Part shown: positions 8,404-60,566 of the stretch, piece after piece
How positions within the stretch are numbered: the stretch's first letter is position 1
How the letters are laid out: each line of letters opens with the position of its first letter
IMG/VR virus record: IMGVR_UViG_3300033143_001962
Span: 1 to 64,000 of that record
Length of the DNA stretch: 64,000 nt
Reading direction: 5' to 3' (one strand)
Notes under the pieces: generated by a model
What the model was told of the DNA's origin: nothing
The model's database searches: none
The model's input: only the letters and a program-made list of their open reading frames with translations
Position numbers and translations under genes: made by a program

Positions 8404-8418
8404 CCGAGGTTTGCCAAA

Positions 8419-8920: not shown

Positions 8921-8942
8921 GTAGTTTTTTATTTATCGTGTT

Positions 8943-10311: not shown

Positions 10312-10320
10312 ACCCGCCTA

Positions 10321-10696: not shown

Positions 10697-10697
10697 T

Positions 10698-10886: not shown

Positions 10887-11086
10887 AATATGATCTTCTG
10901 TACACGTTCAGGAATTATTAAATCACCTTGTTCCTTTTTAGATTTAATATGCGATTGAATAAAGCTTAGTAATTTGTAGTAGTCTGGATCACTGTCGAGT
11001 CCTAGTGATCGCAATGCACTGTACCTAGAAAAGATATGTGCTACGCTTCCATATTTAAGCATAAGGAATGTGTCTTCAGAATTCAT
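10883..11086 (-). CDS. FLxLKYGS-family mini-protein
   Basis: DTFLMLKYGSVAHIF. Confidence 0.65.
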   Translation of the reverse strand: MNSEDTFLMLKYGSVAHIFSRYSALRSLGLDSDPDYYKLLSFIQSHIKSKKEQGDLIIPERVQKIIL

Positions 11087-11277
11087 TAAATTAAATCCAT
11101 TGCATATTCCATTGCAGATTTAGTTCTTATCGCAAGATGGTGTGCCCAAGCATACCCTACTATCATGCATTGTTCATCTTCTGTAAAATCAGCATCCCAA
11201 TCATCAGATATGTTATAAGCATCAATGGCATTTTCCATGCTACCGTACTTTAATATTAAGAATGTTTTAATTGGCAT
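11086..11277 (-). CDS. FLxLKYGS-family mini-protein
   Basis: KTFLILKYGSMENAIDAY. Confidence 0.65.
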   Translation of the reverse strand: MPIKTFLILKYGSMENAIDAYNISDDWDADFTEDEQCMIVGYAWAHHLAIRTKSAMEYAMDLI

Positions 11278-12146: not shown

Positions 12147-13337
12147 TTAGCTGAAAGACAAGTTGCTTACGCTGATTTCGCCTAAGTAATCACCAGCATT
12201 ACCAAAAGATGATGCAGTGTTAGTGAGTTCCACGTAACCATAACGTGTCATGAAGCTTACAACTGGTTCGAACGTAGACGGATCTAAAACAACGCCTGAG
12301 CTCATTAAAGGAATGTAAGGGCAGTAGAACGCTGGAGCGTCTGCTTCACTTGAACCTTTATAACCAATAAGTACCGGAGTACTATCAGCAGCATATGAAT
12401 CAACATATACTTTCATAGCACTGTTTAATGTACCAACTAACTTAGTGTTAGTAGGAGCTTCAAAAGTACCTTCAGTTGTACGTGCAAATGCAGATGTAGT
12501 AGCTGATTGTAATACTGTTAATGCAGCTGGACTAACAACGGCATAGTTACCTGCGCCACGACGTGTACGTTGTGCGATAAGGTTAGCAGTACGGTTAACT
12601 AATACAGCAAGTGCCGCATGTTCATCACCTACGAATGTAGCAGTACCAGATACAGCAGCTTGATCGTAGTTGAATTCAGTTGACGCTAAAGAACGTAAAG
12701 ATAATAAAATCTCTTGATCGATTTCAGCGGTAATTTCTTGTGCTAATGCAGCCATGATTTCAGCTTCGACATCAATGCCGTGCATTGATTGTGCATCTTG
12801 AGCAGCTTCAAAAGTCCAACGCGCTTGTAACTTACGTGTCTTCGCTTCAACAGCTTGCTTTAAGATTTGAACGGAAATGTTACGACCGCCTTCACCTTCC
12901 ATTTGCGCTGTAGCAGCACCACGGTAGTCAGTCTGTGTAGCACCAACGCCTGCAGAGTATGCTTGAGCAATTTTGAAAGGACTTAACGCTTCATCACCAG
13001 CTGTAGTTGGTGTACCAGCAGCAGATGTATCGTTCATTGTTGAACCGTAACGTACACGTAAAGTATGGATCTGGCTTACTGGACCAGACATTGGTTGAAC
13101 ACCTACTAATTCGTTTGCAATTACCGTAGGCATTACACGTCGAATTACTGGTAAAATTACACGGTTTAATGTTGCAACGTTACCAGCGGCAGTAGCGCCA
13201 CTTGTAGCAGATTCTGCTAAGTGGTTACGAGTGTTTTCTAGGATTACGCCCATTGTAGAACGTTTAGTACCGTCTAGACCTTCAAGCAATGCTTCTTTAG
13301 TCTCTCCCCAACGGCCTTCTAATAGTGCTTGTGACAT
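12147..13337 (-). CDS. gp23: major capsid protein (T4 gp23-like)
   Basis: RRVMPTVIANELVGVQPMSGP, KTRKLQARWTFEAAQD..HGID.EAE, FYCPYIPL, FMTRYG. Confidence 0.95.
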   Translation of the reverse strand: MSQALLEGRWGETKEALLEGLDGTKRSTMGVILENTRNHLAESATSGATAAGNVATLNRVILPVIRRVMPTVIANELVGVQPMSGPVSQIHTLRVRYGSTMNDTSAAGTPTTAGDEALSPFKIAQAYSAGVGATQTDYRGAATAQMEGEGGRNISVQILKQAVEAKTRKLQARWTFEAAQDAQSMHGIDVEAEIMAALAQEITAEIDQEILLSLRSLASTEFNYDQAAVSGTATFVGDEHAALAVLVNRTANLIAQRTRRGAGNYAVVSPAALTVLQSATTSAFARTTEGTFEAPTNTKLVGTLNSAMKVYVDSYAADSTPVLIGYKGSSEADAPAFYCPYIPLMSSGVVLDPSTFEPVVSFMTRYGYVELTNTASSFGNAGDYLGEISVSNLSFS

Positions 13338-45100: not shown

Positions 45101-48100
45101 TGCTAAAGATACAGTAACAGATTGGAATGTGTACAGAGCATTTGAATTAGAAGCAGTGATAACAGATGTGCTTGATAACTTAGACGGTTCACTTACATTA
45201 ATATTTGATACTGAACACGGACTAGCAGCAAGTGAAATTTTAGTAGTACAAAATGTTGATGCAGCATTAGTAGATGGCACACATATTATAAGCTCAGTGA
45301 CTGATGACTTTAAAGTTGTTATCCCGGGCGAGTTAGCACAGAATCAAACTACTATAGATGATGTTACAGGAACAGCATTAAAGTTCCTATCAGTGCGCAT
45401 GGAAAATCCAAGCAGCATTGCAGGCTCATTTGTTGATAACAGATTATTTGCAACGGATACTGTATGGATTAACGAATACAATAGTAAAGGTGCAGTGTAC
45501 GAAAAGTCAAGTCCATTTACACCAGTGGTGTCTTACATTAGCCCAGAAGAAGAAGCTAATTCGGAGTACGGTTATGACGTAGTACAAGGTTATAACGGCG
45601 CTGGCATGATGGTAAGTGATCCGGCTATTAATACAAAAGGACAAGTGTTCTGCTTTGACAAATTTGGATCAGCCGATTATATATTAAATCAAGTACTTAA
45701 ACTTAGATCTACAGAAGTAGCACGTTATGGTGAATCACTTGCGATGTCTGAGGAATGGGCAGTAATTGGTGCACCGGGCGACGGAGCATCTATACCAGGT
45801 GTTGCAGTACTAGTATCACGTGATAAGGTTAAAGGATTGTTTAATGAAATTCAAGTTATGACTCATCCTGACGCTACTAACGCAACTCTACTAGATACAG
45901 AATTCGGTAAGAATGTTACATTAAGTACAGATGAGAATTGGTTGTACGTAAGCGAACCTAATGCAAACAAAGTTCACTCGTATCAAAAAGTAGAACATCA
46001 AGCACAAACTATTGCAACAACAATGGACGGAATTACCCAGAATATTTTTGTAGAAGATGTTATTAAAGCTGATACAAAGAATGAATTGTCGGTGACGTTA
46101 GATGGCAACTTACTTTCAACAGCAGAGTACGAATACGACGGAACAAATGTAGTATTTGATGTTACGCCAGCAGATGGTGTTATTGCCCGCGTGTCACGCT
46201 TAGACTCGAATGTGTTTGACGGTAACGGCTCAGCTCAATTCACAATAAACAATGTTTATGCATTGAATGGAATTGATTCTATTAGAGTAGCAATTGATGG
46301 CAATATACAACGTCCGCGATATGATTACACACTAGCAGGTAACGTGTTAACATTTACAACAGCACCTGACTTAGGTACTAATAATATAGTAGTTACAGTT
46401 GATACACATTTTGCTTATGTGAGCACTATTGCAGAAGCAAGTGGTGACTTCAGTACAGCAGTTGATGCAACGACAGATAGCAGTCACATTATAATTACAG
46501 CACCAGCAGATGACAAAGCATATATTTACGATAGAGTTGTTGAACGTTTTGTAGTACACAAAGATGATGCTCTATTAGAACCAATTACGTTTACCCTTAA
46601 TCCTATCGCAGGTAGAACTGTGAGCGGTAATGTATTTGTAAATGGTGTGAAGCAAATTAAAGAAGGATTCAATGTAAACCCTAATTACAGTGTAAGTGGT
46701 AATACAATTACATTTATAACAGACAATGTAAAAGTCGGCGACTTCGTTGATGTTGATACAACTGAATTTAAAGAAATACAAACATTAACAGGCCCAGCAG
46801 GTTCAAGCTTTGGTAACGATGTAAGTATTTGTAAGTCTAAGTGCTCTATATACTTCGGCGCTGAAAATGATAACGACGGCGAAGGTAGTGTTGTGCGCTA
46901 TGTTAACAAAACAAGAATGTACGGTATTATACAAAGTACAATACAGGACTTAACAGTTAGTGTAGGTGATAGTTTACGTGTCAATAATGTTGAGATCGTA
47001 TTTACAGGAACAACAATAGACCAAGTAGCACAAGATGTCAACGATGCTGCAATACCGAATGTTATTGCAAGTGTTAACGATGGTTACTTAATAATCGAAC
47101 TTAAGAACAAAACAATTACATCGATTGCTAACAAGTTAGACGTATTGCCTGGCAAAGGTACTACAATGGCATCGCTTGGCTTACAATCTTACTACAATGG
47201 ACAAACAATTACAAGTCCGCAACCAGCTGCTGGAGCACATTTTGGTAGCTCGGTGCAAATTGACTTAAACTTAAATCAATTAATTGTAGCAGCGGTAAAT
47301 GGGCCGATTGCATACGGCGCAGACACAACTGAAGTTCTCGCAGATACAACAGCGTATACAGCAGACATGGCATCAACAGGTGTAGTTTATACATACGATT
47401 TACTACCTGACGCAACAGAGTTTAGTGAAGGCAAATTAGTATTTGGCCAACAAGTTATAGATGATAAGATGGTAACTACCGGACTGTTTGGTAATGCCGT
47501 AAGCTTAGTAGACGGTACACTAGTTGTTGCATCAATTGCTTACGACACAGACACGTTAACTGATGTAGGGCGAGTTGCTATATTTGAAAATAAAGAAAAC
47601 AAGTTAAGCTGGAATGCAATTAAAACAGAAAAAGACATTGTTGATGTTAGCTTAATTAACTCAGTATTCATTTACAACAATGAAACGTTTGCTGTTGAGC
47701 AGTACCTAGATTACATCGATCCACTTAACGGTAAGATACTTGGTGTAGCTAAACAGAATATAGATTACATAGAAACAAAAGAACCAACAGTGTATGGCAG
47801 CGACTTCACAGGTGCATTATGGGGCAAACAACAAGTTGGACAAATGTGGTGGGATATTAGTACATGTAGATTTGTTGATTATAATCAAAACGATAGTGTA
47901 CAAGCAAGCAAGCTATGGGGCAAAATGTACCCAGGTAGCAGTGTTGATGTTTATCAATGGATTGAAAGTGATGTGACACCAGACTTATACGACGGCGCAG
48001 GTACAGTGTACGATGTAACTAAATTTGTTACAATGTCAGAAATAAACAATAGCGGTATTATACAAAATACTTATTACTACTGGGTTAAAGGTGTTAATGC

Positions 48101-51100
48101 AGTAGATACAAACGCTCACAAAACTTTAAGTGCAGACGCAGTAGCTCAGTACATTGAATCACCAATTAGCTCAGGCATAGCGTACTGTGCATTAATTGAT
48201 CAAAACATTGTAGGGCTGTATAACTGTAAAGAAATTATCAACAGCACTAAGTCAGTACTACATATTGAATACGATAAGATTAAAAATGATAACAATGTAT
48301 TCCACGAGTACAGCTTATTAAGAGAAAACTTTGCCAATGACTTCTTACCAGATGGGCTGTACAAAAAGTTCCAAGACAGCTTATGTGGCGTTGATAGCTT
48401 AGGCAATAAAGTACCGGATGTTAACTTAAGTTATAGTGATAGATTTGGTATTGATTTTAGACCACGTAAGTCTATGTTCATTGATAAGTTTGCAGCTCTG
48501 ACAAGTTATTTAGAGCGTGTTAATGCTATAATGAAATTAAGCACTATTGCAGAGTCTAGGGTTTATCCTTTACTTAATAGTGAAGAGCCTATCCCTGCGC
48601 AAGCATCAGGTGCATGGGATGAAAAAGTATTTAATACAGAAGAACTATCGTTCCAGGACTTAAACATTGTTCCAGCAGGGCACACGTACTTACTTGAAAC
48701 AGATAGTAATAGTAACGGCTTATGGGCAATTTACGAAGTAACAGCCACCAAGACTTTACAATTAAAACGTGTGCAAAGTTATGACACTAAACGTTTTTGG
48801 AGTACTGAGAATTGGTACGCAGAAGACTTTAGTCCGTTTACTAAATCGGATTATGTTGTAGGCACTTATGCAGAATTAGCAGCAATAGACGCAGCTAACA
48901 ACGCAGTGGCTAAAGTACTTGAGAACAGTGTTAACAAGTGGGAAATATACAGATACGAAACTGATACATGGGTACGTGTTGCGTTAGAAAGCGGAACTAT
49001 ACAGTTCAATGAACGTTTATGGAATTATGACTTAGGACGTTACGGTTGGGATACAGAAGTATTTGATGCACAATACAACGATGAAGAACCAGTAATTGAA
49101 TTAAGAAAAATTATTCAATCAATTAACGAAGAAATATTAATTGGTGACTTAGCAGTGGAACGTAACAAAGCGTTCATGTCAATGTTTAATTACATATTGT
49201 CGGAGCAACCACATGTTGATTGGTTGTACAAGACAAGTTTAATTGATGTGAATCACAGAGTACGTAGCTTAAGTCAATATGCAGTATACCAGAAAGATAA
49301 CCAAGACTACTTAGCAGATTACATCAAGGAAGCTAAGCCTTATCATACTAAGATTAAAGACTTATTACTTAGCTATGACGGCAACGATGTATTTGATGGC
49401 TCACTGACTGACTTTGATTGTCCAGCAGTGTACAGCGATGAGTACAATAAATTTATTAGCCCGATCTTAGATGATGGTGCTATCCTTACAACAGACGTAA
49501 GCAATGTACTTGCAGATGATGCACAATGGCAAACAAGCCCATGGGCTGAATGGTACAACAACTACAGATTAAATATCAGTGAAGTTGAAATAGTTAACCC
49601 AGGTAGTGGATATACATTTGCTCCTACTGTTACTGTTACAGGTGACTGTGTAAATCCTGCAGAGCTTATTGCAGTGGTATCAGGCACAGGCGAAATTAAA
49701 GAAATAGAAATTGTTAAAGCAGGCTGCGGATACATTAGCGCACCAATTATTACAATAGAAGGTGGTAACGGCAACGGCGCTACTGCATTAGCTATTACAG
49801 GTAACAACGTAGTCAGAACGCTAAACACTACTATTAAGTACGATAGGTACGAATACGAGTCAAACGTAGTAGAGTGGGAAGCACTAACTGAGTACACCGA
49901 AGACCAATTAGTACGTGTTAACAATGCAGTATATAAAGTGCTTACAACAGAAGAAAGTGCAGAAACATTTAACCCAGCATTACATGAGTTAGTTGATATC
50001 GAAACCTTAAGTGGTATTGATAGAACAACAGGCTACTATGTGAGTGATGTTAACAACCCAGGACTAGACTTATCATTATTAATTAATGGCATTGCATACC
50101 CGGGTGTTGAAGTTGACAGTGTACACTTTGCACAATCACTTGACTCAGTAGGTCCAGAAGGCTTACCGACGTACAGTGAAGAAATAATAGATACAATTTA
50201 CGAGAGCGCGTTCTTAGATACTTACTTAGGCACAACGCCTATAGATATTAATATAGACGGCGGTATGTTCATTGATACATATCACTCACATGCACCGGAC
50301 GAATTAGTTCCAGGTGCAATGTTTGATACACTTGATATTAAAGTGTTTAGTCGCCCTGGCTCAGACTACAACAATGATGGACATGGGTTTGATATACAAA
50401 GCGTAACGAATACAGCAAGTGGAACAACAGGCACGTTTAGCTTTGATGCCGCAGCAAATCACGCAATTGAGCTTGTAGTTGTTAATTTAACAACAGGAGC
50501 AACATTGTACGAAGGTGCAAATTACAGCATTAACTGGACTGACAAGACAGTAGAAGTTACTAGCGGTATTGTACAGGGTGATGAAGTTAAGATATTTGTT
50601 TATGAAATTGGCGGTGGCAATCAGTTGTACAGAGCTACAATGACAGGCGATGAAGCTAATAATACATTTACTGTACCGGCTAAACTGGACGAAATATATA
50701 ATATTGTAATGTTTGCCAATGGTGTTGAACTTACTAACGTAACAACAACCCCAATTAATAATCAGTCATCACTTGTTACTATAACAGGCACTTTACAAGC
50801 AGATGCATTTGTTACTGTTACGGTATTTGGATTTAATATTCCGCAGCGCGACGAAAGCTACCCAGTTACACAAACGTTTATATATGGTACTGATGCACTT
50901 GAAATGGACGTTGATGCATTGACTGGTAAGAACAGACATAACGCTATTGTTGAAGTAAACGGCTTACGTTTACAGCCAGAAGAAGGTGTGCGTAGTATTG
51001 CAAATGGAATAAACACAACGTTCTTATTGCCACAAGGCGGCAATTACAGTCATGACTTAGTTGCAGATAATGAAGTGTCTGTATATGTTAACGATGTGTT

Positions 51101-52130
51101 ACTTGCGAATGGAATTGATTACACATTAAGCCCAGCAGCTCCACAAGCTGCAAGATACGGCACAGCGAAGTACGGTACAGCATTGTATTATAATAGCACC
51201 GGGAACTTTATCCCGCGTTATGTAATATTAAACACTGCACCAGTTGATGGTCAGAAAGTAGAAGTATTTGTTAGTCACGAAACAGCATACGAATTTGATG
51301 TTAACACATTAATATTAGATGCAGCACCAACTAACGGTGATATTGTAGCAGTAACAACATTTAAAGATGTTAGAGAACTTGATATACTAACAGAAGTATA
51401 TGTTGGCCCAACACAAATCGAAGAAGCACAGTTAGACTTGTACGATACAGAAGGTTACGATACACTTGCTTTTGATTTAACATCAGGTGTAGACGTAGAT
51501 GTAAATGTATTCCGAAGCAGTAAGATTGCACTAGCAAATACAAATAGACTATGGGTAACATTAAACGGTGAACGTTTAGCAGCTGGCGAAGATTATAGAA
51601 TTGAGAACACTAACGAGTTAGTACTTACAATTCCAGTAATATCTGAGACAGATGTTGTAGCCGTAACTAGTATTACTGATAGTATTATTACAGATGGTTC
51701 AGAGTTCCGTATATTTAAAGATATGCGTGACAGTGTTGGTATGTACAAAATCTCAGATACTACAACTACAGAATTAATACAAGATTTAAACATAGCAGAC
51801 GACATAATACATGTACGTGATGCAAGTGTACTAGGACAGCCGAATCTAGCTATTGCTAAGTTTGGTATATTAACTATTAACGGTGAGCGCATTACATACA
51901 GAGAACGCGACTTACTTAACAATACGGTTAGTGGGTTACGTCGTGGTACAGCTGGCACAGGTGCAGCAGATTTGCACAGTGCAGATGACAGAGCTTACGA
52001 TATTAGTTCTAAGAGTTTTGTACAATGGGATTATGATAGAATATGGTACGCTGTAGGTGATGGCGAAGCGTCAAATGGAATTCCGTTACAGGACCAAGCG
52101 ACGATACCTGCTTTATTCATTAAAAAGTAA
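39102..52130 (+). CDS. giant 4342-aa baseplate/tail structural protein (gp7-like position)
   Basis: Follows gp6; repeated V.V(N/D)G...DY beta modules, FG-GAP-like propeller repeats, NPGSGYT.AP modules, KPYHTK motif. Confidence 0.7.
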   Translation: MARIRSVDFLPEIFQTETNKKFLNSTLDQLIQEPKFKEVQGYIGRRNAPGATPTDGYVLEPTADRTNYQLEPGVTFKDSDGKTIDALSYLGLINGLKAAGANVDNHDRLFRSETYSWSPFIDFDKFVNYSQYFWLPAGPDSVDVGELADGVLLTNDFNMEQEEDTYSVEDYSIDNPIITVARGGEYTFNVNQPGQEFFIQAQPGADGTMPWAANISSRDVLGVSNNGEDSGAVQFNVPQSNAQDFYHNLTSIGDVDLATSVRMDEIADQLLDDVGEHLGIQNINNNTIVFLNDQLGDAVDLGWINNGIPLTTLAERYQVFKIVLEDVAGDVYVRLNPYQLVNNLEKFTVQYGNEHSNKTFYKTQQGVFKEMPILTASLTTLYYQDSSHPDRFGVINIVDANESPTLNISDILGRTDYTSANAVVFTNGLKVKFRGNTNPAEYSDNEYFVEGVGTAIKLVAVSDLIIPEAYAKSTTAPWDTSPFDSAGLDGTLNAPLDQDYITINRSSIDRNAWSRSNRWFHIDVITKTAEYNNVVLDLDNNDRADRPVIEFDADLRLFNYGTNGKDSINIVDTTEVDALSNVNDEESYTIDGYNLVEGSRVVFAADADLSVRNKIYVVELVDLNNNGTETINLTLAEDSESENNDVVLVTNGLTQQGAVFTFTNNVWVQSQQKESVNQAPLFDVFDTAGTSLSDLQAYPSTSFAGTKAFSYAEGTGLKDKVLGFPLKYLNIDNLGDIVFENNLYTDTFIYVENSVSKDNSPVGDGYLRKYSTREEYTNEIGWSKTVEESYLAQILNFEYTGAALELDVLPKVGLSIPAVHITINNEFINPSDYTVTDNVITCSNIIAEIGDTITVNVISDEVSKLGYYEIPSNIASNMFNENTDLLTLGTIRNHFNNLSQHILDIDGDVNGANNLRDLGDISRYGNLIVQQSAPLALAAMFMRNKEYNFFSATEFNARQYEKFKNQLMDWVSKNEVYGMDAGEVLDAALKELNANKHVDGSFYWSDMLATGEDFEATEYGITAISTNTFTTLYSYNYTSANSKALLVYVNNELLTKDAEYTVANDGPRIEILTTLDVGDIVTIKEYNTTVGSGIPSTPTKMGMYPKFKPELYTDNTYVKPTDVIRGHDGSVTVAHGDFSDDVLLEFEKRVYNNIKVNAEIPLLYSDVQGGQFRFTDYTDAEINQVLAPSLLSWLGWNRIDYKTQDYNKLESKTWNYSSAQCKEGDKVAKGNWRGIYNCFYDTDAPHERPWEMLGLTEQPTWWKNRYGPAPYTAGNLVLWDDLEIGLIKEPGNERIAERFVRPGLTNVLPVDGEGKLLMPLDTVISDYTEYDFKKSWALGDHGPAETAWRKSSAFPYAVQTLLALTKPAQYFSLMADRDRYTYNTDFNQYLYDERHRIDSRKVEILEEDTFKHSYINWIVDYNKHYGYNSSEKLKEDMSNLGVSLMHHMASFTDKNSLRIFTDKSSPDSTNSSLLLPDESYNLLMYKNQPFDEIIYSSVIVQKTEDGYSVSGNSATNPYFKIFASEPTGQFKTITVGRTERTSTSVNVPKDFTEEVVFIPYGHVFRSRQAVADFIVSYNKYLVAQGLQFNDAVGTIQVDWEEMVKEFIYWTDQGWSTGSVVNLNPSASTLEFERELVLVDDLNNLELNEQPLDQNREPLQSGDYVVDRIDNNFKIRMLNNNVISYLKFNLTNFEHLLVLDNVSIFNDLMYDPVTGVRQHRVKLSGFATYDWNGQLDAQGFLYNDDNVVEWSQTNSYNTGDIVKFKNSYWSAAEKLQPAAEFDFSKWVKTNYNDIKKGLLPNIATKADQQLDFYNNKTANLESDVDLMALGLTGFRARDYLRALDLHDISQAHIYSDMIQSKGTADSLNLFQDVILNNEVVDYEIYENWAIKRAEFGASSSRSYIELQLDETFHTSNPSIVEVVNATIDAEFGDQTITTANIYKQSEKNIDKNILPTNGDKNLDTMLPSAGFVNPDDVDIAIFELADFPEVTDVIDGTLVWVAKDTVTDWNVYRAFELEAVITDVLDNLDGSLTLIFDTEHGLAASEILVVQNVDAALVDGTHIISSVTDDFKVVIPGELAQNQTTIDDVTGTALKFLSVRMENPSSIAGSFVDNRLFATDTVWINEYNSKGAVYEKSSPFTPVVSYISPEEEANSEYGYDVVQGYNGAGMMVSDPAINTKGQVFCFDKFGSADYILNQVLKLRSTEVARYGESLAMSEEWAVIGAPGDGASIPGVAVLVSRDKVKGLFNEIQVMTHPDATNATLLDTEFGKNVTLSTDENWLYVSEPNANKVHSYQKVEHQAQTIATTMDGITQNIFVEDVIKADTKNELSVTLDGNLLSTAEYEYDGTNVVFDVTPADGVIARVSRLDSNVFDGNGSAQFTINNVYALNGIDSIRVAIDGNIQRPRYDYTLAGNVLTFTTAPDLGTNNIVVTVDTHFAYVSTIAEASGDFSTAVDATTDSSHIIITAPADDKAYIYDRVVERFVVHKDDALLEPITFTLNPIAGRTVSGNVFVNGVKQIKEGFNVNPNYSVSGNTITFITDNVKVGDFVDVDTTEFKEIQTLTGPAGSSFGNDVSICKSKCSIYFGAENDNDGEGSVVRYVNKTRMYGIIQSTIQDLTVSVGDSLRVNNVEIVFTGTTIDQVAQDVNDAAIPNVIASVNDGYLIIELKNKTITSIANKLDVLPGKGTTMASLGLQSYYNGQTITSPQPAAGAHFGSSVQIDLNLNQLIVAAVNGPIAYGADTTEVLADTTAYTADMASTGVVYTYDLLPDATEFSEGKLVFGQQVIDDKMVTTGLFGNAVSLVDGTLVVASIAYDTDTLTDVGRVAIFENKENKLSWNAIKTEKDIVDVSLINSVFIYNNETFAVEQYLDYIDPLNGKILGVAKQNIDYIETKEPTVYGSDFTGALWGKQQVGQMWWDISTCRFVDYNQNDSVQASKLWGKMYPGSSVDVYQWIESDVTPDLYDGAGTVYDVTKFVTMSEINNSGIIQNTYYYWVKGVNAVDTNAHKTLSADAVAQYIESPISSGIAYCALIDQNIVGLYNCKEIINSTKSVLHIEYDKIKNDNNVFHEYSLLRENFANDFLPDGLYKKFQDSLCGVDSLGNKVPDVNLSYSDRFGIDFRPRKSMFIDKFAALTSYLERVNAIMKLSTIAESRVYPLLNSEEPIPAQASGAWDEKVFNTEELSFQDLNIVPAGHTYLLETDSNSNGLWAIYEVTATKTLQLKRVQSYDTKRFWSTENWYAEDFSPFTKSDYVVGTYAELAAIDAANNAVAKVLENSVNKWEIYRYETDTWVRVALESGTIQFNERLWNYDLGRYGWDTEVFDAQYNDEEPVIELRKIIQSINEEILIGDLAVERNKAFMSMFNYILSEQPHVDWLYKTSLIDVNHRVRSLSQYAVYQKDNQDYLADYIKEAKPYHTKIKDLLLSYDGNDVFDGSLTDFDCPAVYSDEYNKFISPILDDGAILTTDVSNVLADDAQWQTSPWAEWYNNYRLNISEVEIVNPGSGYTFAPTVTVTGDCVNPAELIAVVSGTGEIKEIEIVKAGCGYISAPIITIEGGNGNGATALAITGNNVVRTLNTTIKYDRYEYESNVVEWEALTEYTEDQLVRVNNAVYKVLTTEESAETFNPALHELVDIETLSGIDRTTGYYVSDVNNPGLDLSLLINGIAYPGVEVDSVHFAQSLDSVGPEGLPTYSEEIIDTIYESAFLDTYLGTTPIDINIDGGMFIDTYHSHAPDELVPGAMFDTLDIKVFSRPGSDYNNDGHGFDIQSVTNTASGTTGTFSFDAAANHAIELVVVNLTTGATLYEGANYSINWTDKTVEVTSGIVQGDEVKIFVYEIGGGNQLYRATMTGDEANNTFTVPAKLDEIYNIVMFANGVELTNVTTTPINNQSSLVTITGTLQADAFVTVTVFGFNIPQRDESYPVTQTFIYGTDALEMDVDALTGKNRHNAIVEVNGLRLQPEEGVRSIANGINTTFLLPQGGNYSHDLVADNEVSVYVNDVLLANGIDYTLSPAAPQAARYGTAKYGTALYYNSTGNFIPRYVILNTAPVDGQKVEVFVSHETAYEFDVNTLILDAAPTNGDIVAVTTFKDVRELDILTEVYVGPTQIEEAQLDLYDTEGYDTLAFDLTSGVDVDVNVFRSSKIALANTNRLWVTLNGERLAAGEDYRIENTNELVLTIPVISETDVVAVTSITDSIITDGSEFRIFKDMRDSVGMYKISDTTTTELIQDLNIADDIIHVRDASVLGQPNLAIAKFGILTINGERITYRERDLLNNTVSGLRRGTAGTGAADLHSADDRAYDISSKSFVQWDYDRIWYAVGDGEASNGIPLQDQATIPALFIKK

Positions 52131-52846: not shown

Positions 52847-54340
52847 ATGGCTTATACAATAAACAAAACAGATGGTTCTATCTTCGCAACAGTATCGGAT
52901 GGAACAATCAATACAGACAGTAGTGTTACTGTCATTGGTAAAAACTACGCTGGTTACGGCGAATTTTTAGGTGAAAACTTTTTACGCCTTTTAGAAAACG
53001 GTTCAAATGCGGCAGCACCAGCTAACCCATTACAGGGCCAGCTATGGTTTGATTCAGCAGCAGGTTTACTTAAAGTATTTAACGGTACAACATTTAAGAA
53101 CTTAGGCGCAGCGGCAGCAGACAGTGTTGCTCCACCAAGTAATGTAACAGGCGACATGTGGTTTGACACAGTTAACTCACAGTTAAACGTTTATGATGGA
53201 GCTGACTTTATATTAGTTGGTCCAGCATTTACAGCAGGCACAGGTACTTCTGGCGCCATTGTTGATACTATCCAAGATAGTTTAGCAGTTGATCACGTTG
53301 TAATTAAATTATACGCAGAAGACGACATTGTAGCTATTGTAAGCAAAGACACAGAATTTACAATTGGTACACCACTGCCAGGTTTCGCAACAACAATTAC
53401 TCCAGGTGTTCAATTAGCATCAACAGTAAACGGTGAGATTCCAACGTTTATCGGTCAAGCTACAGATTCACAATTATTAGACGGTATCGACAGCACAGGC
53501 TTTATTAGTGCTACTACTGATGACACTACAACAGGAACAATTGGCATTTTAAATGACAACGGTTTAACAGTTGGCGCAGATAGCGATGCAAAGATTACAG
53601 TAAGTGGCACAAATGTTACAGTTGGTAATACAACATTAGACGGAGACTTGATTTTACAAGTTAACGATGGAGGCGTACCAACTGACGTTATAACAATAGA
53701 TGGCGCGACAGGTAGAGCAACAGTAGCAGCACCACTTACTGCAAACGATGTAGCTAACAAAGATTATATCGATACTGCAATAACAGCAGCCGTTGATCCT
53801 GTTACAGGTACTGCATTACTTAAAGATGGTAGCAATGATGTCACTGGCGTTATTAACCCAGCAGCAGATAATGCAACAGATTTCGGTGAAGTAGCAAAAC
53901 GTTGGGCAACAGTACATGCAGTAACATTTAGCGGTAAAGCTACGACAGCACAGTACGCGGATTTGGCGGAACGCTTTGAAGCAGATGCTACAATGGTTCC
54001 AGGCACAGTAGTTGAGTTAGGCGGTATAGCAGAAATTACAGCTTCGGTAAGTGATTTATCAAGTGAAGTGTTTGGTGTTATAAGTACTAATGCAGCGTTC
54101 TTAATGAACTCAGACGCAGGCACAAATGAAACGCATCCACCAGTAGCAATGAGCGGTAGAGTACCGGTCAGAGTTATTGGAACGATAAATAAAGGACAGC
54201 GTTTAGTGTCGGCAGGCGACGGCTTAGCCAGAGCAGCTACACTAGAAGAAATTAACTCTTTCAATGTAATCGGAAGAGCACTAGAAAGTAAAACAACAAG
54301 CGGCGAAGGTGTAATTGAAGCATTCGTAACCGTTAACTAA
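52847..54340 (+). CDS. tail fibre-like protein with C-terminal chaperone-like domain
   Basis: Two G.(L/M)WFD.....L.V(F/Y).G repeats; C-terminal AQYADLAERF...PGTVV..GG..EIT...GRVPVRV. Confidence 0.7.
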   Translation: MAYTINKTDGSIFATVSDGTINTDSSVTVIGKNYAGYGEFLGENFLRLLENGSNAAAPANPLQGQLWFDSAAGLLKVFNGTTFKNLGAAAADSVAPPSNVTGDMWFDTVNSQLNVYDGADFILVGPAFTAGTGTSGAIVDTIQDSLAVDHVVIKLYAEDDIVAIVSKDTEFTIGTPLPGFATTITPGVQLASTVNGEIPTFIGQATDSQLLDGIDSTGFISATTDDTTTGTIGILNDNGLTVGADSDAKITVSGTNVTVGNTTLDGDLILQVNDGGVPTDVITIDGATGRATVAAPLTANDVANKDYIDTAITAAVDPVTGTALLKDGSNDVTGVINPAADNATDFGEVAKRWATVHAVTFSGKATTAQYADLAERFEADATMVPGTVVELGGIAEITASVSDLSSEVFGVISTNAAFLMNSDAGTNETHPPVAMSGRVPVRVIGTINKGQRLVSAGDGLARAATLEEINSFNVIGRALESKTTSGEGVIEAFVTVN

Positions 54341-55302: not shown

Positions 55303-55331
55303 AAGTAAGGGGCTTTTGCCCCTTTACTTTT
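55303..55331 (+). terminator. intrinsic terminator ending the tail operon
   Basis: AGTAAGGGGC-TTTT-GCCCCTTTACT-TTT. Confidence 0.75.
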
Positions 55332-55351
55332 GACTTCTTTTTTGCTATAAT
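55323..55351 (+). promoter_or_regulatory. sigma70-type promoter for the modification cluster
   Basis: TTTACT-17-TATAAT with TGn. ATG at 55358 follows almost immediately, so the mRNA may be leaderless. Confidence 0.55.
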
Positions 55352-56478: not shown

Positions 56479-57307
56479 GTTAGACCCAAACGGTTACTTA
56501 ATAGTAGCAACTAACACAGATGATGTAGACTACATTGATTGTGCGGTTGCATGTGCGCGTAGTATTAGATTGCACACACCAGACGCTAAGATATGCTTAT
56601 TAACTACTAGCGATGTGAAATTGGTCGCACATACAGTATTTGATTACATTAAGTTATTTCCGTACCCAGTCAATAAAGAAAATCCATTTGCAAACGATTG
56701 GCAAATATACCACGCAAGTCCATTCCGTGAAACGATTAAAATAGAAGCGGATATGATTATCCCGCATAGTATCGAACATTGGTTTAGTATGCTTAGACAC
56801 AAAGATGTTGTACTAACACTTGGAGCAAGGAACTACAAAAATGAAAAAACAAATGAAAGACATTATAGAAAAATATTTGATGCAAATAATTTACCTGACG
56901 TATATAATGCGATTACTTACTGGCGCGTAAGTCAAACAGCACATGACTTCTTTGCGTTAGTTAAGCATTTATTTGATGCATGGCCAGACGTGCAGCAGCA
57001 AATTAAATTAGGCAGTACTGACATTGGCACTACAGATTTAGTGTACGCAATAGCGGCAAGGTCTATGGGTGTAGAAAAAGTAACTTTGCCAGAAACATCA
57101 TATCCTACGCTTATACATATGAAAGGAAGGATAAATAAGCTTGTAGGCGAAGACTGGACAAAAGAATGCGTTTACGAATTCGATAAATCAAACATTCGTA
57201 TTAACACTATCGATCAACAATATCCCTTTCATTACCAAGTCAAAGAATTTAGCAAGGAATTAAACAAATATTATGACGAACTTCTTCAAAGCCCTGAGCC
57301 AAGTTAA
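56471..57307 (+). CDS. GT-A-like paralogue
   Basis: GYLIVA.N, SPFRETIKIEADM, LPDVYNA..Y. Confidence 0.6.
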   Translation: MHKLDPNGYLIVATNTDDVDYIDCAVACARSIRLHTPDAKICLLTTSDVKLVAHTVFDYIKLFPYPVNKENPFANDWQIYHASPFRETIKIEADMIIPHSIEHWFSMLRHKDVVLTLGARNYKNEKTNERHYRKIFDANNLPDVYNAITYWRVSQTAHDFFALVKHLFDAWPDVQQQIKLGSTDIGTTDLVYAIAARSMGVEKVTLPETSYPTLIHMKGRINKLVGEDWTKECVYEFDKSNIRINTIDQQYPFHYQVKEFSKELNKYYDELLQSPEPS

Positions 57308-57596
57308 CGAGCCAGTCTATCAAAAAATAGAATTTAGGCTGTACTACGACGACGAAAATAAGCCAACGTTCTACACCATGGAAGAACTTGAAGGCAATTA
57401 CATTAACATAACAGCACTAGAGTTTGCAGAAGGCAGGCAAGATGTAGTTATCAAAGATGGCAAAATTAAACGTGTTAGTGGTATAAGCATAGGTAAATTA
57501 GTACCATCGCAGGATGGATATGGCACACTACGAGACGATGTCAGTATAGTAGGATTAGAAACATTATGGAGTATGAAAACGTATGAGAACGATTAA
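57273..57596 (+). CDS. hypothetical protein
   Basis: FRLYYD motif; in operon. Confidence 0.5.
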   Translation: MTNFFKALSQVNEPVYQKIEFRLYYDDENKPTFYTMEELEGNYINITALEFAEGRQDVVIKDGKIKRVSGISIGKLVPSQDGYGTLRDDVSIVGLETLWSMKTYEND

Positions 57597-57834
57597 AATA
57601 AAGAAAGCATTCACTGAAGACTTAGTGCCAGTGGTAAAAATAATATTCGATGATCAAGAAGCATCAGCGACATGGAAGCCACACATTGTTGAAGATATGG
57701 AAAAGTATCACCCTGGGATTGATGTCACGGACGAAATTGTAAAGGCTCTAGTTGGAGAGTTAGATTTTGAATTTACATTAACTGAAGATGAAAAGGTTAT
57801 GTGTTTGGAAAAATTATCAGAAACCTTTAAATGA
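57583..57834 (+). CDS. mini-protein with major-capsid fragment
   Basis: SATWKPHIVEDMEKYHPGIDVTDEIVKALVGEL vs MCP QARWTFEAAQDAQSMH-GIDVEAEIMAALAQEI. Confidence 0.65.
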   Translation: MRTIKIKKAFTEDLVPVVKIIFDDQEASATWKPHIVEDMEKYHPGIDVTDEIVKALVGELDFEFTLTEDEKVMCLEKLSETFK

Positions 57835-58769
57835 GTGAATACAGCATGGACATAGCTGATATGGACGTTGTTTATCTTAGTTACGACGAGCCGCAGAAAG
57901 AAGAGTTCTGGGTTAAGATTAAAAACATGGTGCCATGGGCAGTACGTGTAGACGGAGTTAAAGGCAGCGACGCAGCACATAAAGCCGCAGCTGATGCAAG
58001 TCAAACAGATCGCTTCGTTCTAATAGATGGCGACAACATGCCAGACTTAGACTTCTTTAATCAGTCTATAAATTTTGTAGACGCTGATTACGAAAAAGCA
58101 GTATTCCGTTGGAGAGCACGTAACGAAATAAATGGCTTAATGTACGGCAACGGTGGACTTAGTTGTTGGACTAAAGAGTTTATATACAACATGAAAACAC
58201 ACGAGGCGAGTGAAGGCGATGATGAAACCGATGTCGAATTTTGTTTCGATCCTAATTACTGGGCTATGCATGATTGTTTCAGTACTACTTTTCCTAATGG
58301 CAGTCAGTACCAAGCATGGCGTGCCGGTTTCAGAGAAGGCGTTAAAATGTGTCTTATTAAGGGCACTAAGCCGAGCATTATAGAATTTAAAGATCAAGTA
58401 CATAAGCGTAACATGGATAACCTAAGCATTTGGCATAATATAGGGCTAGACGTAAAGAACGGCGAATGGGCCATAGCAGGAGCAAGACAAGGTACGTACA
58501 TGACTATGCTAGACGACACGTGGGATTATAAAGACGTACAAGACTTCGATAAAGTAGAAGAAATTTACAATACAAGTGTACGTGGATTTAATGCTGAAGG
58601 CTTAATGGATGATATAGGTGACGAGCTTGAAGCACAATTAGACATGACTATATTGCTACCAGACACCGCTAACAGTAGATTCTTTAAGCATCATTACAAA
58701 GCTAACTTTCATAATAAAGGTATCGGCGTTAAAGAAATTGATGTCATACGGGAGCAAGAAGGATGGTAA
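57831..58769 (+). CDS. glycosyltransferase-like protein
   Basis: LSYDEP, RVDGVKGSDAAHK, LIDGDN (DxD), YGNGG, AWRAGFREGVK. Confidence 0.6.
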   Translation: MSEYSMDIADMDVVYLSYDEPQKEEFWVKIKNMVPWAVRVDGVKGSDAAHKAAADASQTDRFVLIDGDNMPDLDFFNQSINFVDADYEKAVFRWRARNEINGLMYGNGGLSCWTKEFIYNMKTHEASEGDDETDVEFCFDPNYWAMHDCFSTTFPNGSQYQAWRAGFREGVKMCLIKGTKPSIIEFKDQVHKRNMDNLSIWHNIGLDVKNGEWAIAGARQGTYMTMLDDTWDYKDVQDFDKVEEIYNTSVRGFNAEGLMDDIGDELEAQLDMTILLPDTANSRFFKHHYKANFHNKGIGVKEIDVIREQEGW

Positions 58770-59323
58770 GTTGGCTAGACACAAACATATCTTTTAATAA
58801 TGCATTGTCAGATAACGGCCACAAATTAATCAATAAATTAATGATACAGTCACTTAGTGAGTCAGAAGGGAAGATGGACAAGTATTATTTTGACGATGTT
58901 GATTTTGTCAATGAAGCATGGCTTAACTCTCTTAAAGATGCAGGATTGTATCCGTATGTTGCTCTAGCAGTATATCGACGCGAAGGTGCACACGGTTTAG
59001 AATTTGCACATACTGATTCACTTACTACGTATGCGGCCTTAAATTGGGTAGAGTGTACAGGACTAAGTGAAATGGTATGGTACACCCCAACAAAAGACCC
59101 GACAATGATTGAAGCAATAGATACATTAGTATACGAACACGATGACCTAATAGAGATAGATAGTAAGGACATTCATGGTGATAATATGACACTAGTTCAA
59201 ACGAATATACCTCACGACGTCCGCCGTGACGGTGCAGCTCGTCTGACAATTAGTGTACGTTTCCGCAACGGATGGCAATCTTGGGAAGAAGCAGTAGAAT
59301 TTTTTAAAGGTAATAACTTATGA
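58763..59323 (+). CDS. HxD..H cupin / 2OG-Fe(II) oxygenase-like protein (paralogue 1)
   Basis: AHTD, ALNW, MVWY, TNIPHDV, RLTISVRF. Confidence 0.6.
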   Translation: MVSWLDTNISFNNALSDNGHKLINKLMIQSLSESEGKMDKYYFDDVDFVNEAWLNSLKDAGLYPYVALAVYRREGAHGLEFAHTDSLTTYAALNWVECTGLSEMVWYTPTKDPTMIEAIDTLVYEHDDLIEIDSKDIHGDNMTLVQTNIPHDVRRDGAARLTISVRFRNGWQSWEEAVEFFKGNNL

Positions 59324-59934
59324 ACCCGTATTACGCAACAACAAATATAGATTTTATGAACGGTATCTCAAATTACGGCGCAGAAGAAATTAGACGCTTA
59401 GACGCTGAGAGTATAACTAACCCGGAACAATTCTCAATTGAGAAGTACTTCATTGATTACGATGATAAAGAAAAGAACTTCCTGACACTTGAATGGAAAG
59501 ACAAACTAGTAGCAGCAGGTCTAGAGCCGTATTACGCTTTGGTGTTTGTTAGACAAAACACAGAACACAATAATGCAGACGGCCCGCACGTTGACGCACA
59601 GCCCGACGGTATATTCACAGCATTAAATTATGCGCATTGTTTAGGTGAAGAGAAAATGGTTTGGTACAAGGCGAATGAAACAGTTACAGACCTTAGTAAG
59701 GTGCCAGTACATGATACGCTGCCTTATATACAGTACGAAAAAAGTAAAGTCCGTGAAGTCGCATCAGCACCTACAGCAAGCCGTGGAAGCTTAATGTCGT
59801 TAGTGCGAACAGACATTCCGCATGACATTATTATTAAAGGTAACAGCAGACGCTTGTCAGTTAGCTTGCGCTTTCACAATAAATTTAAAGATTGGGAAGA
59901 AGCAGTAGAATTTTTTAAAGGTATTAAAATATGA
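59320..59934 (+). CDS. HxD..H cupin / 2OG-Fe(II) oxygenase-like protein (paralogue 2)
   Basis: PHVD, ALNY, MVWY, TDIPHDI, RLSVSLRF. Confidence 0.6.
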   Translation: MNPYYATTNIDFMNGISNYGAEEIRRLDAESITNPEQFSIEKYFIDYDDKEKNFLTLEWKDKLVAAGLEPYYALVFVRQNTEHNNADGPHVDAQPDGIFTALNYAHCLGEEKMVWYKANETVTDLSKVPVHDTLPYIQYEKSKVREVASAPTASRGSLMSLVRTDIPHDIIIKGNSRRLSVSLRFHNKFKDWEEAVEFFKGIKI

Positions 59935-60566
59935 TATACAATAACAACGGTAAACACTTAATGATAATTGGCTTCAATGCAAGCACAATTACACAAGAGA
60001 TAACGTACATGTTTGAAGAAGGCATTATGCGTGGTGATGCACCTGGTCTTAATTTTGATGTTATTACACCTGACGAATTCTTTAAGATTGGCCAGAAGGA
60101 AGTATTCCAGTACCTTGTTATGTTTAACAAAGATCAGAAAGTACGTAAAGACGTTATAGATACAATAAACTGCGAAGGTTTAAATTGTGTTAGTGCAGTA
60201 CATCATACAGCCTGGATGCCAGCAAATGCATACATTGGCAAAGGAACAGTTATAGGTCCATTTGCATCATTGTACCAGCATACTAAACTAGGAGACCACG
60301 TTGTCTTAGAAGCATACAGTATGGTAGGACATCACTCAGAGGTTGGAGACAATGTGCATATACGTCCTAATGTAATGATATCTGGCAATGTAACAATAGG
60401 TGATAATTGTATGATCAACTCGCGGAGTACAGTACTTGAAGGTTATAGTATTTGCGACGGAGTAGCATTAGGGGCAATGACTTGTGTGCGTAAGCATATA
60501 ACAGAGTCCGGTATATACTTGGGTACAAGTGCTAAACGTGTTGGTGAATTTGCTGATGCGACTTGA
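59931..60566 (+). CDS. hexapeptide-repeat sugar acetyltransferase (NeuD/PglD-like)
   Basis: AVHHTA, IGKGTVIG, VGHHSEVGDNVHI, IGDNCMI hexapeptide repeats. Confidence 0.85.
   Translation: MIYNNNGKHLMIIGFNASTITQEITYMFEEGIMRGDAPGLNFDVITPDEFFKIGQKEVFQYLVMFNKDQKVRKDVIDTINCEGLNCVSAVHHTAWMPANAYIGKGTVIGPFASLYQHTKLGDHVVLEAYSMVGHHSEVGDNVHIRPNVMISGNVTIGDNCMINSRSTVLEGYSICDGVALGAMTCVRKHITESGIYLGTSAKRVGEFADAT

What the first reader, a model, noticed from the sequence alone, without database searches (positions are those of the whole stretch)
57583..57834. Further capsid-fragment mini-gene inserted in the glycosyltransferase cluster
ATW......D....HPGIDV..EI..AL..E gives 13 identities over ~32 aa with MCP 171-202. 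It ends LTEDEKVMCLEKLSE, reminiscent of the TEEEKVW..L / WEKLSD tag. It lies 50 kb from the array, on the other strand, so fragment genes are not confined to one locus.
Basis: partly seen in the sequence, partly recalled or inferred. Interest (0 to 1): 0.6.

Follow-up and report, generated by a model that had tools for sequence, protein, structure and literature searches.

The report
Capsid-derived mini-gene, recently inserted
This is a real 83-codon phage gene from an apparently undescribed family of small acidic proteins copied from a 55-residue piece of the T4-type major capsid protein, and in this phage lineage alone it has been slipped between two overlapping genes; what the capsid look-alike does is untested.

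Summary
The ORF at 57583-57834 (+) exists as described. Its 13 identities with MCP residues 171-202 are real (Smith-Waterman score 62, shuffle p about 1e-5). Taken alone the case is borderline: BLASTP, Pfam Gp23 and PHROGs find nothing.

An exhaustive HMMER search settled it. It found 14, later 17, metagenomic homologues of 73-86 aa at 25-47% identity. A profile built from them without the query finds the query (5e-29) and the phage's own MCP (2e-10, MCP 152-206). A family profile also hits the MCPs of five related jumbo phages and T4 gp23 residues 253-303. So the gene belongs to a conserved mini-protein family descended from the P-domain strands, short acidic helix and start of the spine helix of gp23-type capsid proteins.

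AlphaFold2 predicts a compact fold of three strands and three helices (pLDDT 89.5).

In all 80 related loci the two flanking genes abut with nothing between them. The gene is therefore a lineage-specific insertion of about 250 nt, still translationally coupled.

The claimed "tag" is not shared (tag profile -0.2 bits). The glycosyltransferase label for the neighbours is unverified.

Function is inferred only: an MCP mimic, either a decoy for MCP-recognising factors or a modulator of capsid assembly.

The parts
57583..57834 (+). Mini-gene: 83 codons plus TGA. Acidic protein (net charge -8, pI 4.6).
   Evidence: ORF list and translation. Member of a conserved family: leave-one-out profile E 5.4e-29. 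Charge and pI.
57586..57774 (+). Residues 2-64, the segment homologous to MCP residues 152-206 (T4 gp23 253-303). Predicted as three beta strands, a short acidic helix, the H-(P)-G-x-D turn and a long helix.
   Evidence: Profile positions 2-56 align to MCP 152-206 and to gp23 253-303. Secondary structure from the AlphaFold2 model with pLDDT 89.5.
57775..57831 (+). Residues 65-83, a family-specific C-terminal helix (LTxxE(K/R)...).
   Evidence: L66 and E70 are invariant in the family. It has no Trp, and the tag profile scores -0.2 bits.
57590..57840 (.). About 250 nt present here and absent from the closest relatives. The boundaries are ambiguous by a few nt because ATGAG occurs at both ends (57583-57587 and 57831-57835).
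   Evidence: A single-gap alignment puts window 57500-57589 against L001/L003 4906-4995 and window 57841-57900 against 4996-5055. In all 80 loci the flanking genes abut.
57273..57596 (+). Upstream 107-aa gene. Its stop overlaps the mini-gene start by 14 nt. In relatives its homologue ends on the start of the 312-aa gene.
   Evidence: Homologue found in all 80 related loci, E 1.9e-36 to 1.8e-8.
57831..58769 (+). Downstream 312-aa gene (function unknown, possible GT-A-like DxD). Its start overlaps the mini-gene stop in ATGA.
   Evidence: 277 relatives in viral contigs at 63-75% identity. No Pfam hit. Weak Atlas lead only.
12147..13337 (-). Major capsid protein gene (396 aa, gp23 type).
   Evidence: Pfam Gp23 E 1.2e-95 and phrog_138 E 1.7e-97. 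T4 gp23 structures at 3e-37.
12720..12884 (-). MCP residues 152-206, the segment that the mini-protein family resembles.
   Evidence: This stretch is identical in the MCPs of G000 and G001 and nearly so in G002-G005.
55307..55351 (+). Terminator-like hairpin followed by a sigma-70-like site. It is the likely start of the tightly packed plus-strand gene run (55358 onwards) that contains the mini-gene.
   Evidence: Consensus scan only. No internal promoter or terminator was called next to the mini-gene.

Best explanation
Window 57583-57834 encodes a genuine small acidic protein. It belongs to a conserved family of mini-proteins (73-86 aa) from uncultured jumbo phages that has no entry in Pfam or PHROGs. 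The family descends from an internal 55-residue piece of the gp23-type major capsid protein: the P-domain beta strands, the short negatively charged P-domain helix, the H-G-x-D turn and the first half of the spine helix. The piece has gained its own start codon and an extra C-terminal helix, and it is predicted to fold alone into a compact domain of three strands and three helices. In this phage lineage only, a ready-made copy of about 250 nt was inserted exactly at the stop/start overlap of two conserved genes. It took over the upstream coupling site and kept an ATGA overlap with the downstream gene, so it is made as part of that operon. These points are shown. Inferred mechanism: the protein acts as a soluble look-alike of that capsid element and competes for whatever recognises it on unassembled MCP. 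My first choice is a host factor that senses or handles the capsid protein, which would make it an immune decoy or blocker. My second choice is the complementary surface of MCP capsomers themselves. I put the identity and history at about 0.9, 'acts by mimicry of the MCP element' at about 0.55, and 'decoy for an MCP-sensing host factor' specifically at about 0.3.
For: Family: an exhaustive HMMER search of 1.84 billion representatives found 14 small full-length homologues at 37-47% identity. Three more were added from the profile search, giving an 18-row alignment. Homology to the MCP:
- A profile without the query hits the query at 5.4e-29 and the phage's own MCP at 2.2e-10 among 2,095 six-frame ORFs.
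- The A2 family profile, which includes the query, hits the MCPs of five related, at least 92% complete, phages at 7e-11 to 1.5e-9.
- T4 gp23 chains are the four best PDB hits, E 0.0023, residues 253-303.
- Ten of 15 members hit Pfam Gp23, best 1.1e-6.
- Member P0013 finds 89 GenBank phage records by tblastn. In the 30 listed rows the match lies almost always under a gene annotated as major capsid or head protein, and no record covers 80% of the mini-protein.
Autonomous fold: AlphaFold2 with the 18-row alignment gives pLDDT 89.5 and pTM 0.74. Insertion: all 80 related loci have the 107-aa and 312-aa homologues abutting, and a single gap of about 250 nt separates the window from L001 and L003. 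Importance of the copied element: in T4, gp23 253-303 holds the head-length mutations A268, A275, D285 and D287 and the gp31-bypass site G292. It also contains the short acidic helix that makes inter-capsomer charge contacts (PMC9546572; the residue letters match the alignment). D47, nearly invariant in the family, aligns with T4 D285. Accessory, host-interface character: the gene is present in G000 and absent from G001-G005. Homologues sit among small accessory genes, repeatedly 1-3 genes after an RF-1-domain (GGQ) gene and near PTH2. All 18 members are acidic, pI 4.3-5.5. MCPs are documented triggers of bacterial immunity: CapRel (PMC9712102) and Avs7/Dsr1 with EF-Tu (PMC13581612).
Against: The query alone does not reach significance against gp23: BLASTP finds nothing, Pfam nothing at E<=1, and phmmer gives E 0.24. 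No expression data exist, since no sequencing run was listed. No partner is known. The fold searches found nothing above noise. The decoy idea has no direct evidence, and an MCP-like peptide could just as well trigger a sensor as block it (from my own knowledge, the T4 Gol peptide alone activates Lit). The RF-1 association comes from a few related contig groups and does not apply to this copy, which sits elsewhere. I did not confirm that the phages carrying the homologues have a gp23-type MCP.
Confidence: 0.5

Rival explanations
1. Capsid-assembly modulator or interference factor. The free copy of the acidic P-domain helix binds the positively charged P-domain strands of MCP capsomers at the quasi-threefold contacts. 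It would either tune head size or assembly of this jumbo phage, or poison the capsids of competing gp23-type phages.
For: The copied segment is exactly the one that makes inter-capsomer charge contacts in T4 and where head-length mutations cluster. The short helix is net negative in 14 of 18 members. From my own knowledge, small proteins that redirect capsid assembly by mimicry exist (SaPI CpmB, P4 Sid).
Against: The gene is dispensable: five related complete phages with nearly identical MCP segments lack it. It is not in the structural module and has no TATAAATA late-promoter motif nearby. A dominant-negative fragment would also threaten the phage's own capsid.
Confidence: 0.25
2. Chaperonin-related role. 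The fragment carries the MCP determinant of co-chaperonin dependence and occupies or tunes GroEL with the phage Cpn10.
For: The T4 gp31-bypass site G292 lies in the copied segment. A Cpn10 gene lies 2 kb upstream of the homologue in L089/L090.
Against: Cpn10 is replaced by other small genes in the sister contig and is absent from the other contexts. Only one of the four bypass residues falls in the segment. I found no Cpn10 link in the window.
Confidence: 0.07
3. Decaying, functionless remnant of a local partial duplication of the resident MCP gene.
For: It resembles this phage's own MCP. The phage does carry other MCP fragments.
Against: It is closer to 17 homologues from other phages over its whole length (25-47% identity) than to the MCP. 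Those homologues share its start (M-R), length and family-specific C-terminal helix. A confident compact fold is predicted. There is no DNA-level or flanking MCP similarity. The reading frame is intact and still coupled to its neighbours.
Confidence: 0.04
4. Chance resemblance: an unrelated ORFan that happens to share a helix-like motif with gp23.
For: The query alone is not significant in BLASTP, Pfam, PHROGs or phmmer.
Against: Profile-level E-values of 1e-9 to 1e-11 against six MCPs over 55 colinear positions. T4 gp23 tops the PDB list. A weak tblastn hit of the query itself falls on the phage RM378 head protein. A family member finds 89 GenBank phage records, nearly all listed ones under capsid genes.
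Confidence: 0.02
5. It is the same kind of protein as the tagged array genes (EEKxWxKL tag fused to an MCP piece), with the tag moved to the C-terminus.
For: There is a superficial resemblance of LTEDEKVMCLEKLSE to TEEEKVW..L and WEKLSD. Tagged genes carrying the same MCP segment exist (genome 156721-156921; G001 86-aa ORF).
Against: The tag profile gives -0.2 bits, E 170, rank 290 of 2,095 ORFs, whereas all 22 true tags score E<=0.005. The invariant Trp is absent from all 18 family members. The Cys and the spacing are family features, which rules out my own idea of a 3-nt slip in a former TGG.
Confidence: 0.04

Closest known systems
gp23-type major capsid protein (Pfam PF07068; T4 gp23 residues 253-303)
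   Same: Colinear homology over about 55 residues: P-domain strands, short acidic helix, H-G-x-D turn and first half of the spine helix. The same key residues are conserved (W/Y, D, H-G-x-D, E, A-L, E).
   Different: It is 83 aa instead of about 400-520. It lacks the N-arm, A domain, P loop and the rest of the HK97 fold. It has its own start, an extra strand region and a new C-terminal helix, and is predicted to fold alone. The query itself is below Pfam detection. It cannot build a shell.
T4 gp24 vertex protein (a full-length MCP paralogue given a new job)
   Same: A copy of the capsid protein gene kept for a separate role (PMC9546572, and my own knowledge).
   Different: gp24 is a complete HK97-fold subunit and a core virion part. 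The mini-protein is a fragment-sized accessory gene that close relatives lack.
Tagged MCP-fragment mini-genes of the same phage group (window 4700-4969 (-), 5454-5618 (-); genome 156721-156921 (-); G001 L088 1483-1743 (-))
   Same: They are small ORFs carrying conserved gp23 blocks. Two of them carry the very same segment, MCP 165-205.
   Different: They carry an EEKxWxKL motif and lack the N-terminal strands and the LTxxE helix. They are confined to G000 and G001 and lie mostly near the MCP gene. The 57583 family is older, wider and untagged.
T4 Gol peptide and Lit (a short MCP stretch that is biologically active by itself)
   Same: It shows that a short conserved gp23 segment can be recognised by a host defence factor together with EF-Tu (my own knowledge; the MCP and EF-Tu theme also appears in PMC13581612).
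   Different: Gol is gp23 residues about 93-122, a different segment. It is part of the MCP rather than a separate gene, and it triggers rather than blocks defence.
Capsid-size redirecting small proteins of satellites (SaPI CpmB, P4 Sid) and phage anti-sensor proteins such as DSAD1
   Same: They are small accessory proteins that work by competing for a surface used by a virion structural protein (my own knowledge; DSAD1 and DSR2 in PMC11087589, abstract seen).
   Different: None is known to be derived from an internal MCP fragment. No sequence or fold relation was found here.

Membership tests
Pfam PF07068 Gp23 (major capsid protein) | The protein itself reaches the family HMM threshold (24.4 bits) | tested here: not met
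   hmmscan finds no Gp23 hit for the ORF at E<=1. The six-frame search of the genome with PF07068 lists the MCP and three other fragments but not this ORF.
Pfam PF07068 Gp23 (major capsid protein) | Homology to gp23 demonstrable through intermediate sequences | tested here: met
   Leave-one-out family profile against the phage's own MCP gives 2.2e-10. Five other MCPs are hit at 7e-11 to 1.5e-9. T4 gp23 is hit at 0.0023 as the top PDB hits. Ten of 15 members hit PF07068, best 1.1e-6.
Pfam PF07068 Gp23 (major capsid protein) | Complete HK97-type capsid fold able to form capsomers | tested here: not met
   Only 83 aa. Only gp23 253-303 is covered. The model is a small three-strand, three-helix domain. 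It is a fragment homologue, not a capsid protein.
New mini-protein family (alignments A2 and A3, 73-86 aa) | Full-length similarity, M-R start, W ... H-G-x-D ... E-I..AL..E core, LTxxE C-terminal helix, acidic | tested here: met
   E 5.4e-29 against the profile built without it. Invariant M1, R2, E51, E59, L66, E70 and near-invariant D23, H43, D47 are all present. pI 4.6.
Tagged array proteins (EEKxWxKL motif) | Match to the tag, including its invariant Trp | tested here: not met
   The tag HMM from 22 instances scores the ORF -0.2 bits, E 170, rank 290. The true tags all score E<=0.005. No Trp in the C-terminal region of any family member.
   No Pfam hit for the 271-, 278- and 312-aa neighbours at E<=1. 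The PHROG hit is to a family of unknown function. The Atlas lead to Glycos_transf_2 scores only 0.87. A hexapeptide acyltransferase lies at 59931-60566.
Phage anti-defence decoy or competitor proteins | Binds and neutralises a host sensor of a structural protein | not testable with these tools
   The host and its defence systems are unknown. PADLOC scan gave no consistent hit. Support is indirect only: accessory distribution, acidity and mimicry of a conserved MCP element.
Lineage-specific gene insertion (moron-like) | Absent at the orthologous junction in relatives, with intact flanks | tested here: met
   Eighty of 80 related loci have the flanking homologues abutting. A single gap of about 250 nt separates the window from L001 and L003.

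The most novel reading that the evidence does not exclude
Jumbo phages have turned an internal piece of their own capsid protein into a free-standing, self-folding mini-protein. They deploy it as an accessory weapon, either as a decoy that blinds host immune sensors or translation-linked factors that recognise the conserved MCP element, or as an interference factor against rival gp23-type phages. The tagged MCP-fragment genes of the same phage group would then be a second, independent invention of the same trick.
Probability: 0.3. Interest if true: 0.85.

Novelty: new variant of a known kind. Interest (0 to 1): 0.62.

Why it matters
Capsid proteins are among the commonest triggers of bacterial abortive-infection systems, and the copied segment is the part of gp23 that controls head length and inter-capsomer contacts. 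A conserved, self-folding, free copy of that segment, gained and lost like an accessory gene, would be a new class of capsid mimic. It would give a small, easily expressed reagent for asking what recognises unassembled MCP in infected cells. It is also a clean example of how a fragment of a large fold becomes an independent domain, and of how a ready-made mini-gene can be inserted at a stop/start overlap without breaking an operon. If it proves inert, the finding still corrects the annotation: this is a family, not an ORFan and not a capsid pseudogene.

Tried and rejected
- Direct BLASTP of the ORF against the MCP found no alignment.
- Pfam and PHROGs on the ORF alone found nothing relevant.
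- The word-indexed protein search returned only the query itself.
- blastn of the 4.1-kb region against GenBank phages found no match.
- tblastn of the ORF against phages gave two weak hits, one on the RM378 head protein at E 0.1.
- A search for relatives of the 278-aa neighbour found none.
- Single-sequence AlphaFold2 gave an unusable model (pLDDT 56).
- Foldseek against the PDB gave no E<=0.001 match. The VIA-align wide search gave a best Z of 6.9 to an unrelated protein, within the stated noise.
- The complex-prediction job on MCP plus mini-protein gave no verdict, neither support nor evidence against.
- No sequencing run was listed, so read laying was not used and nothing can be said about expression or population variants.
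- The PADLOC scan gave scattered single weak hits.
- I considered that VMCLEKLSE was a former MWEKLSE with a 3-nt slip inside TGG. I rejected this because the other family members have the same spacing and often the same Cys.
- TATAAATA late-promoter motifs occur 4 times in the window, fewer than chance expects, and none is near the gene.
- dN/dS was not computed. The look-ups work by identical protein, so the available DNA pairs are biased.

Full report
**The observation**

The ORF at 57583-57834 (+) is real. It has 83 codons, an ATG start and a TGA stop. Its start overlaps the stop of the upstream 107-aa ORF (57273-57596) by 14 nt. Its stop overlaps the start of the downstream 312-aa ORF (57831-58769) in ATGA.

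Smith-Waterman gives 62 for ORF 25-81 against MCP 168-220. Two thousand shuffles gave mean 27, sd 4.2, maximum 50, and Gumbel p 1.1e-5.

Standard tools on the ORF alone stay silent:
- BLASTP finds nothing.
- Pfam and PHROGs find nothing relevant.
- A PF07068 scan of the whole genome lists the MCP and three other fragments but not this ORF.
- phmmer ranks the MCP as the best non-self hit among 2,095 six-frame ORFs, but only at E 0.24.

**What settled it**

The word-indexed search found only the query. I therefore used the exhaustive HMMER search of 1.84 billion representatives. It returned 14 small proteins of 73-85 aa, 37-47% identical over essentially the whole length. A profile search added more, and three of these gave an 18-row alignment.

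The family shares:
- an M-R start and three short strands;
- then W ... D ... H-G-x-D ... E-I..A-L..E;
- and a C-terminal F-x-L-T-x-x-E-(K/R) helix.

Several members resemble gp23 much more plainly than the query does.

A profile built from the 17 homologues without the query finds three ORFs in this genome:
- the query at 5.4e-29;
- the MCP at 2.2e-10 (profile 2-56 against MCP 152-206);
- a further 66-aa fragment gene at 156721-156921 at 1e-3.

Other results point the same way:
- The A2 family profile, which includes the query, hits the MCPs of five related, 92-100% complete phages of 320-349 kb at 7e-11 to 1.5e-9.
- T4 gp23 chains are the four best PDB hits, at residues 253-303.
- Ten of 15 members hit Pfam Gp23, best 1.1e-6.
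- Three of 18 hit phrog_138, major head protein, and no other PHROG.
- Member P0013 alone finds 89 GenBank phage records by tblastn. Most listed hits lie under genes annotated as major capsid or head protein in jumbo myophages (PA5oct, RaK2, K64-1, XaC1 and others). No record covers 80% of the mini-protein.

The homology is therefore established transitively. The family appears to be missing from cultured phages and from Pfam and PHROGs.

**What part of the capsid protein it is**

The alignment to full-length T4 gp23 runs from R253 to N303. According to the T4 head structures (PMC9546572, read), this stretch contains:
- the head-length mutations A268V, A275T, D285V and D287V/N, which sit by the short, negatively charged P-domain helix;
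- that helix itself, which makes charge contacts with the positively charged P-domain strands of neighbouring capsomers near the quasi-threefold axes;
- G292, one of the gp31-bypass positions in the spine helix.

The residue letters at these numbers agree with the alignment, which checks the numbering. The family's near-invariant D47 corresponds to T4 D285, and invariant E51 to E289.

In the five related phages this MCP stretch is almost unchanged. All 18 mini-proteins are acidic (pI 4.3-5.5), and the short helix is net negative in 14 of them.

**Fold**

AlphaFold2 fails without an alignment (pLDDT 56). With the 18 rows it gives a confident compact model (pLDDT 89.5, pTM 0.74): strands 4-10, 16-22 and 25-30, and helices 33-42, 48-64 and 68-82.

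The order strand, strand, short helix, long helix mirrors the MCP segment. I infer that the extra C-terminal helix covers the face that the rest of the MCP would bury.

Foldseek and the VIA-align wide search found nothing above noise. That is unsurprising for a fragment-sized domain.

**History at this site**

The 312-aa neighbour has 277 relatives in viral contigs, and I examined the best 80, which are 63-75% identical. Every one has a homologue of the 107-aa gene ending on, or overlapping, the start of the 312-aa homologue. None has an ORF between them or any relative of the mini-protein within 5 kb.

A single-gap alignment places about 250 extra nt in the window (57590-57840) relative to the two closest relatives. 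The sequence ATGAG lies at both edges. The mini-gene uses what was the start context of the 312-aa gene, and it ends in a new ATGA overlap, so translational coupling is kept on both sides.

The family profile finds no copy elsewhere in the five related complete genomes. The gene is therefore a recent, lineage-specific acquisition of a pre-existing family member, not a local duplication of the resident MCP gene.

**Context of the family elsewhere**

Homologues lie among many small accessory genes of other large phages; one contig is 363.5 kb. In several contig groups an RF-1-domain (GGQ) gene lies one to three genes upstream, and PTH2 lies downstream. Other members sit by a glutaredoxin gene or in other settings.

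In the window's own genome, the other carrier of this MCP segment is the tagged 66-aa ORF at 156721-156921 (-). It overlaps the start of the RF-1-domain gene 156329-156724 (-) by 4 nt, near a cREC_REC homologue. Both genes are close relatives of the ones flanking the mini-gene in L091.

This repeated neighbourhood is a lead towards a translation-linked or host-interface role. It is not proof, and it does not apply to the 57583 copy itself.

**The 'tag'**

The array at about 2.9-11.3 kb (-) does contain a striking peptide motif: a charged run, then [MVILF]-W-x-[KRI]-L. There are 17 copies in 3037-10140, and five more elsewhere in the genome have the same charged prefix. Codon choice varies between copies, so the motif is kept at the protein level.

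A profile of the 22 instances recovers all of them at E<=0.005, with the next ORF at 0.84. It scores the 57583 ORF at -0.2 bits, rank 290. No member of the mini-protein family has the Trp. Their C-terminal LTxxE(K/R)xxC... helix is a feature of its own. The tag claim is not supported.

**The neighbours**

The 'glycosyltransferase' label is unverified:
- no Pfam hits;
- an Atlas lead of 0.87;
- a hexapeptide acyltransferase 2 kb downstream.

A terminator-like hairpin and a sigma-70-like site at 55307-55351 precede the packed plus-strand run that holds the gene.

**How it most likely works**

Shown:
- it is a conserved, probably self-folding copy of the MCP's P-domain strand and acidic-helix element;
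- it is acidic;
- it is accessory, being present or absent among close relatives;
- it is inserted so as to be co-translated with its operon.

Inferred: it acts by mimicry, competing for whatever binds that element on unassembled MCP.

- I rank a host factor first, making it a decoy or blocker of MCP recognition. MCPs are frequent immune triggers (PMC9712102; PMC13581612), and the gene behaves like a host-interface accessory gene.
- I rank binding to MCP capsomers second, which would mean assembly tuning or interference with rival phages.
- A chaperonin link is third.

The complex prediction of MCP with the mini-protein gave no verdict and counts for nothing either way. No sequencing run was listed, so expression is untested.

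**Verdict**

This is not an isolated scrap but a member of an undescribed family of capsid-derived mini-proteins, freshly inserted here. The tag link is wrong, the function is open, and the tests are simple.

Noticed in passing
window 3037-10140 (-), plus genome 71342 (+), 105155, 156859, 192670, 197778 (-): Twenty-two small ORFs share a peptide motif: a charged run, then [MVILF]-W-x-[KRI]-L (for example EEKVWHRL, REMWRRLK, RVWEKLSD). It lies at the N-terminus in some and at the very C-terminus in others. Codons vary between copies, so it is conserved as protein rather than DNA. Its role is unknown.
   Followed up: partly
window 4700-4969 (-): An 89-aa ORF carries a near-copy of the MCP block at residues 57-86 (PF07068 E 2e-9; phrog_138 9e-9). 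From memory, this corresponds to the T4 Gol region that activates Lit. The closest relative G001 has a tagged 141-aa counterpart (L088 1800-2225 (-)).
   Followed up: partly
window 5454-5618 (-): A 54-aa ORF has the tag (KEIMWDKLKF) followed by the MCP block YCPYIPL (MCP 331-345; PF07068 E 0.007).
   Followed up: partly
genome G000:C1:156721-156921 (-), outside the window: A 66-aa ORF combines the tag (EEKYEVWNKLKD) with the same MCP segment as the finding (MCP 167-199; PF07068 E 0.001). It overlaps the start of an RF-1-domain (GGQ) gene at 156329-156724 by 4 nt and lies near a cREC_REC gene at 157276-157584. The same gene set flanks a mini-family member in L091.
   Followed up: partly
L089, L090, L091-L096 and two contigs without DNA: Members of the mini-protein family lie repeatedly 1-3 genes downstream of an RF-1/PCRF-domain gene, with PTH2, DAHP synthase, ferredoxin and, in one group, Cpn10 nearby. 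This may be a translation-rescue or auxiliary island of jumbo phages.
   Followed up: partly
window 6733-11277 (-): There is a second multi-copy family of small ORFs of about 55-70 aa sharing an N-terminal (F/Y)L(I/M)LKYGS motif, with at least a dozen copies interleaved with the tagged genes.
   Followed up: no
G001 (record of L003), 255535-257284 (-): Only the closest relative has extra PF07068 fragments: three, lying 8-9 kb from its MCP gene. Three other complete relatives (G002, G003, G005) have the MCP alone. The tagged fragment genes therefore look like a young, sub-lineage invention.
   Followed up: partly
window 39102-52130 (+): A single 4,342-aa ORF follows a 1,130-aa ORF in the plus-strand block. 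Downstream lies a 497-aa protein with a weak Peptidase_G2 autoproteolytic domain (52847-54340), which suggests tail fibre or spike genes.
   Followed up: no
window 58763-59323 (+) and 59320-59934 (+): Two adjacent, overlapping genes (186 and 204 aa) look like tandem paralogues. Both end in ...W(Q/K)xWEEAVEFFKG. Neither has a Pfam or PHROG hit.
   Followed up: no
whole genome G000: The record is 249,797 bp, 38.6% G+C, and estimated 72% complete. Related complete genomes are 320-349 kb, one with direct terminal repeats.
   Followed up: partly
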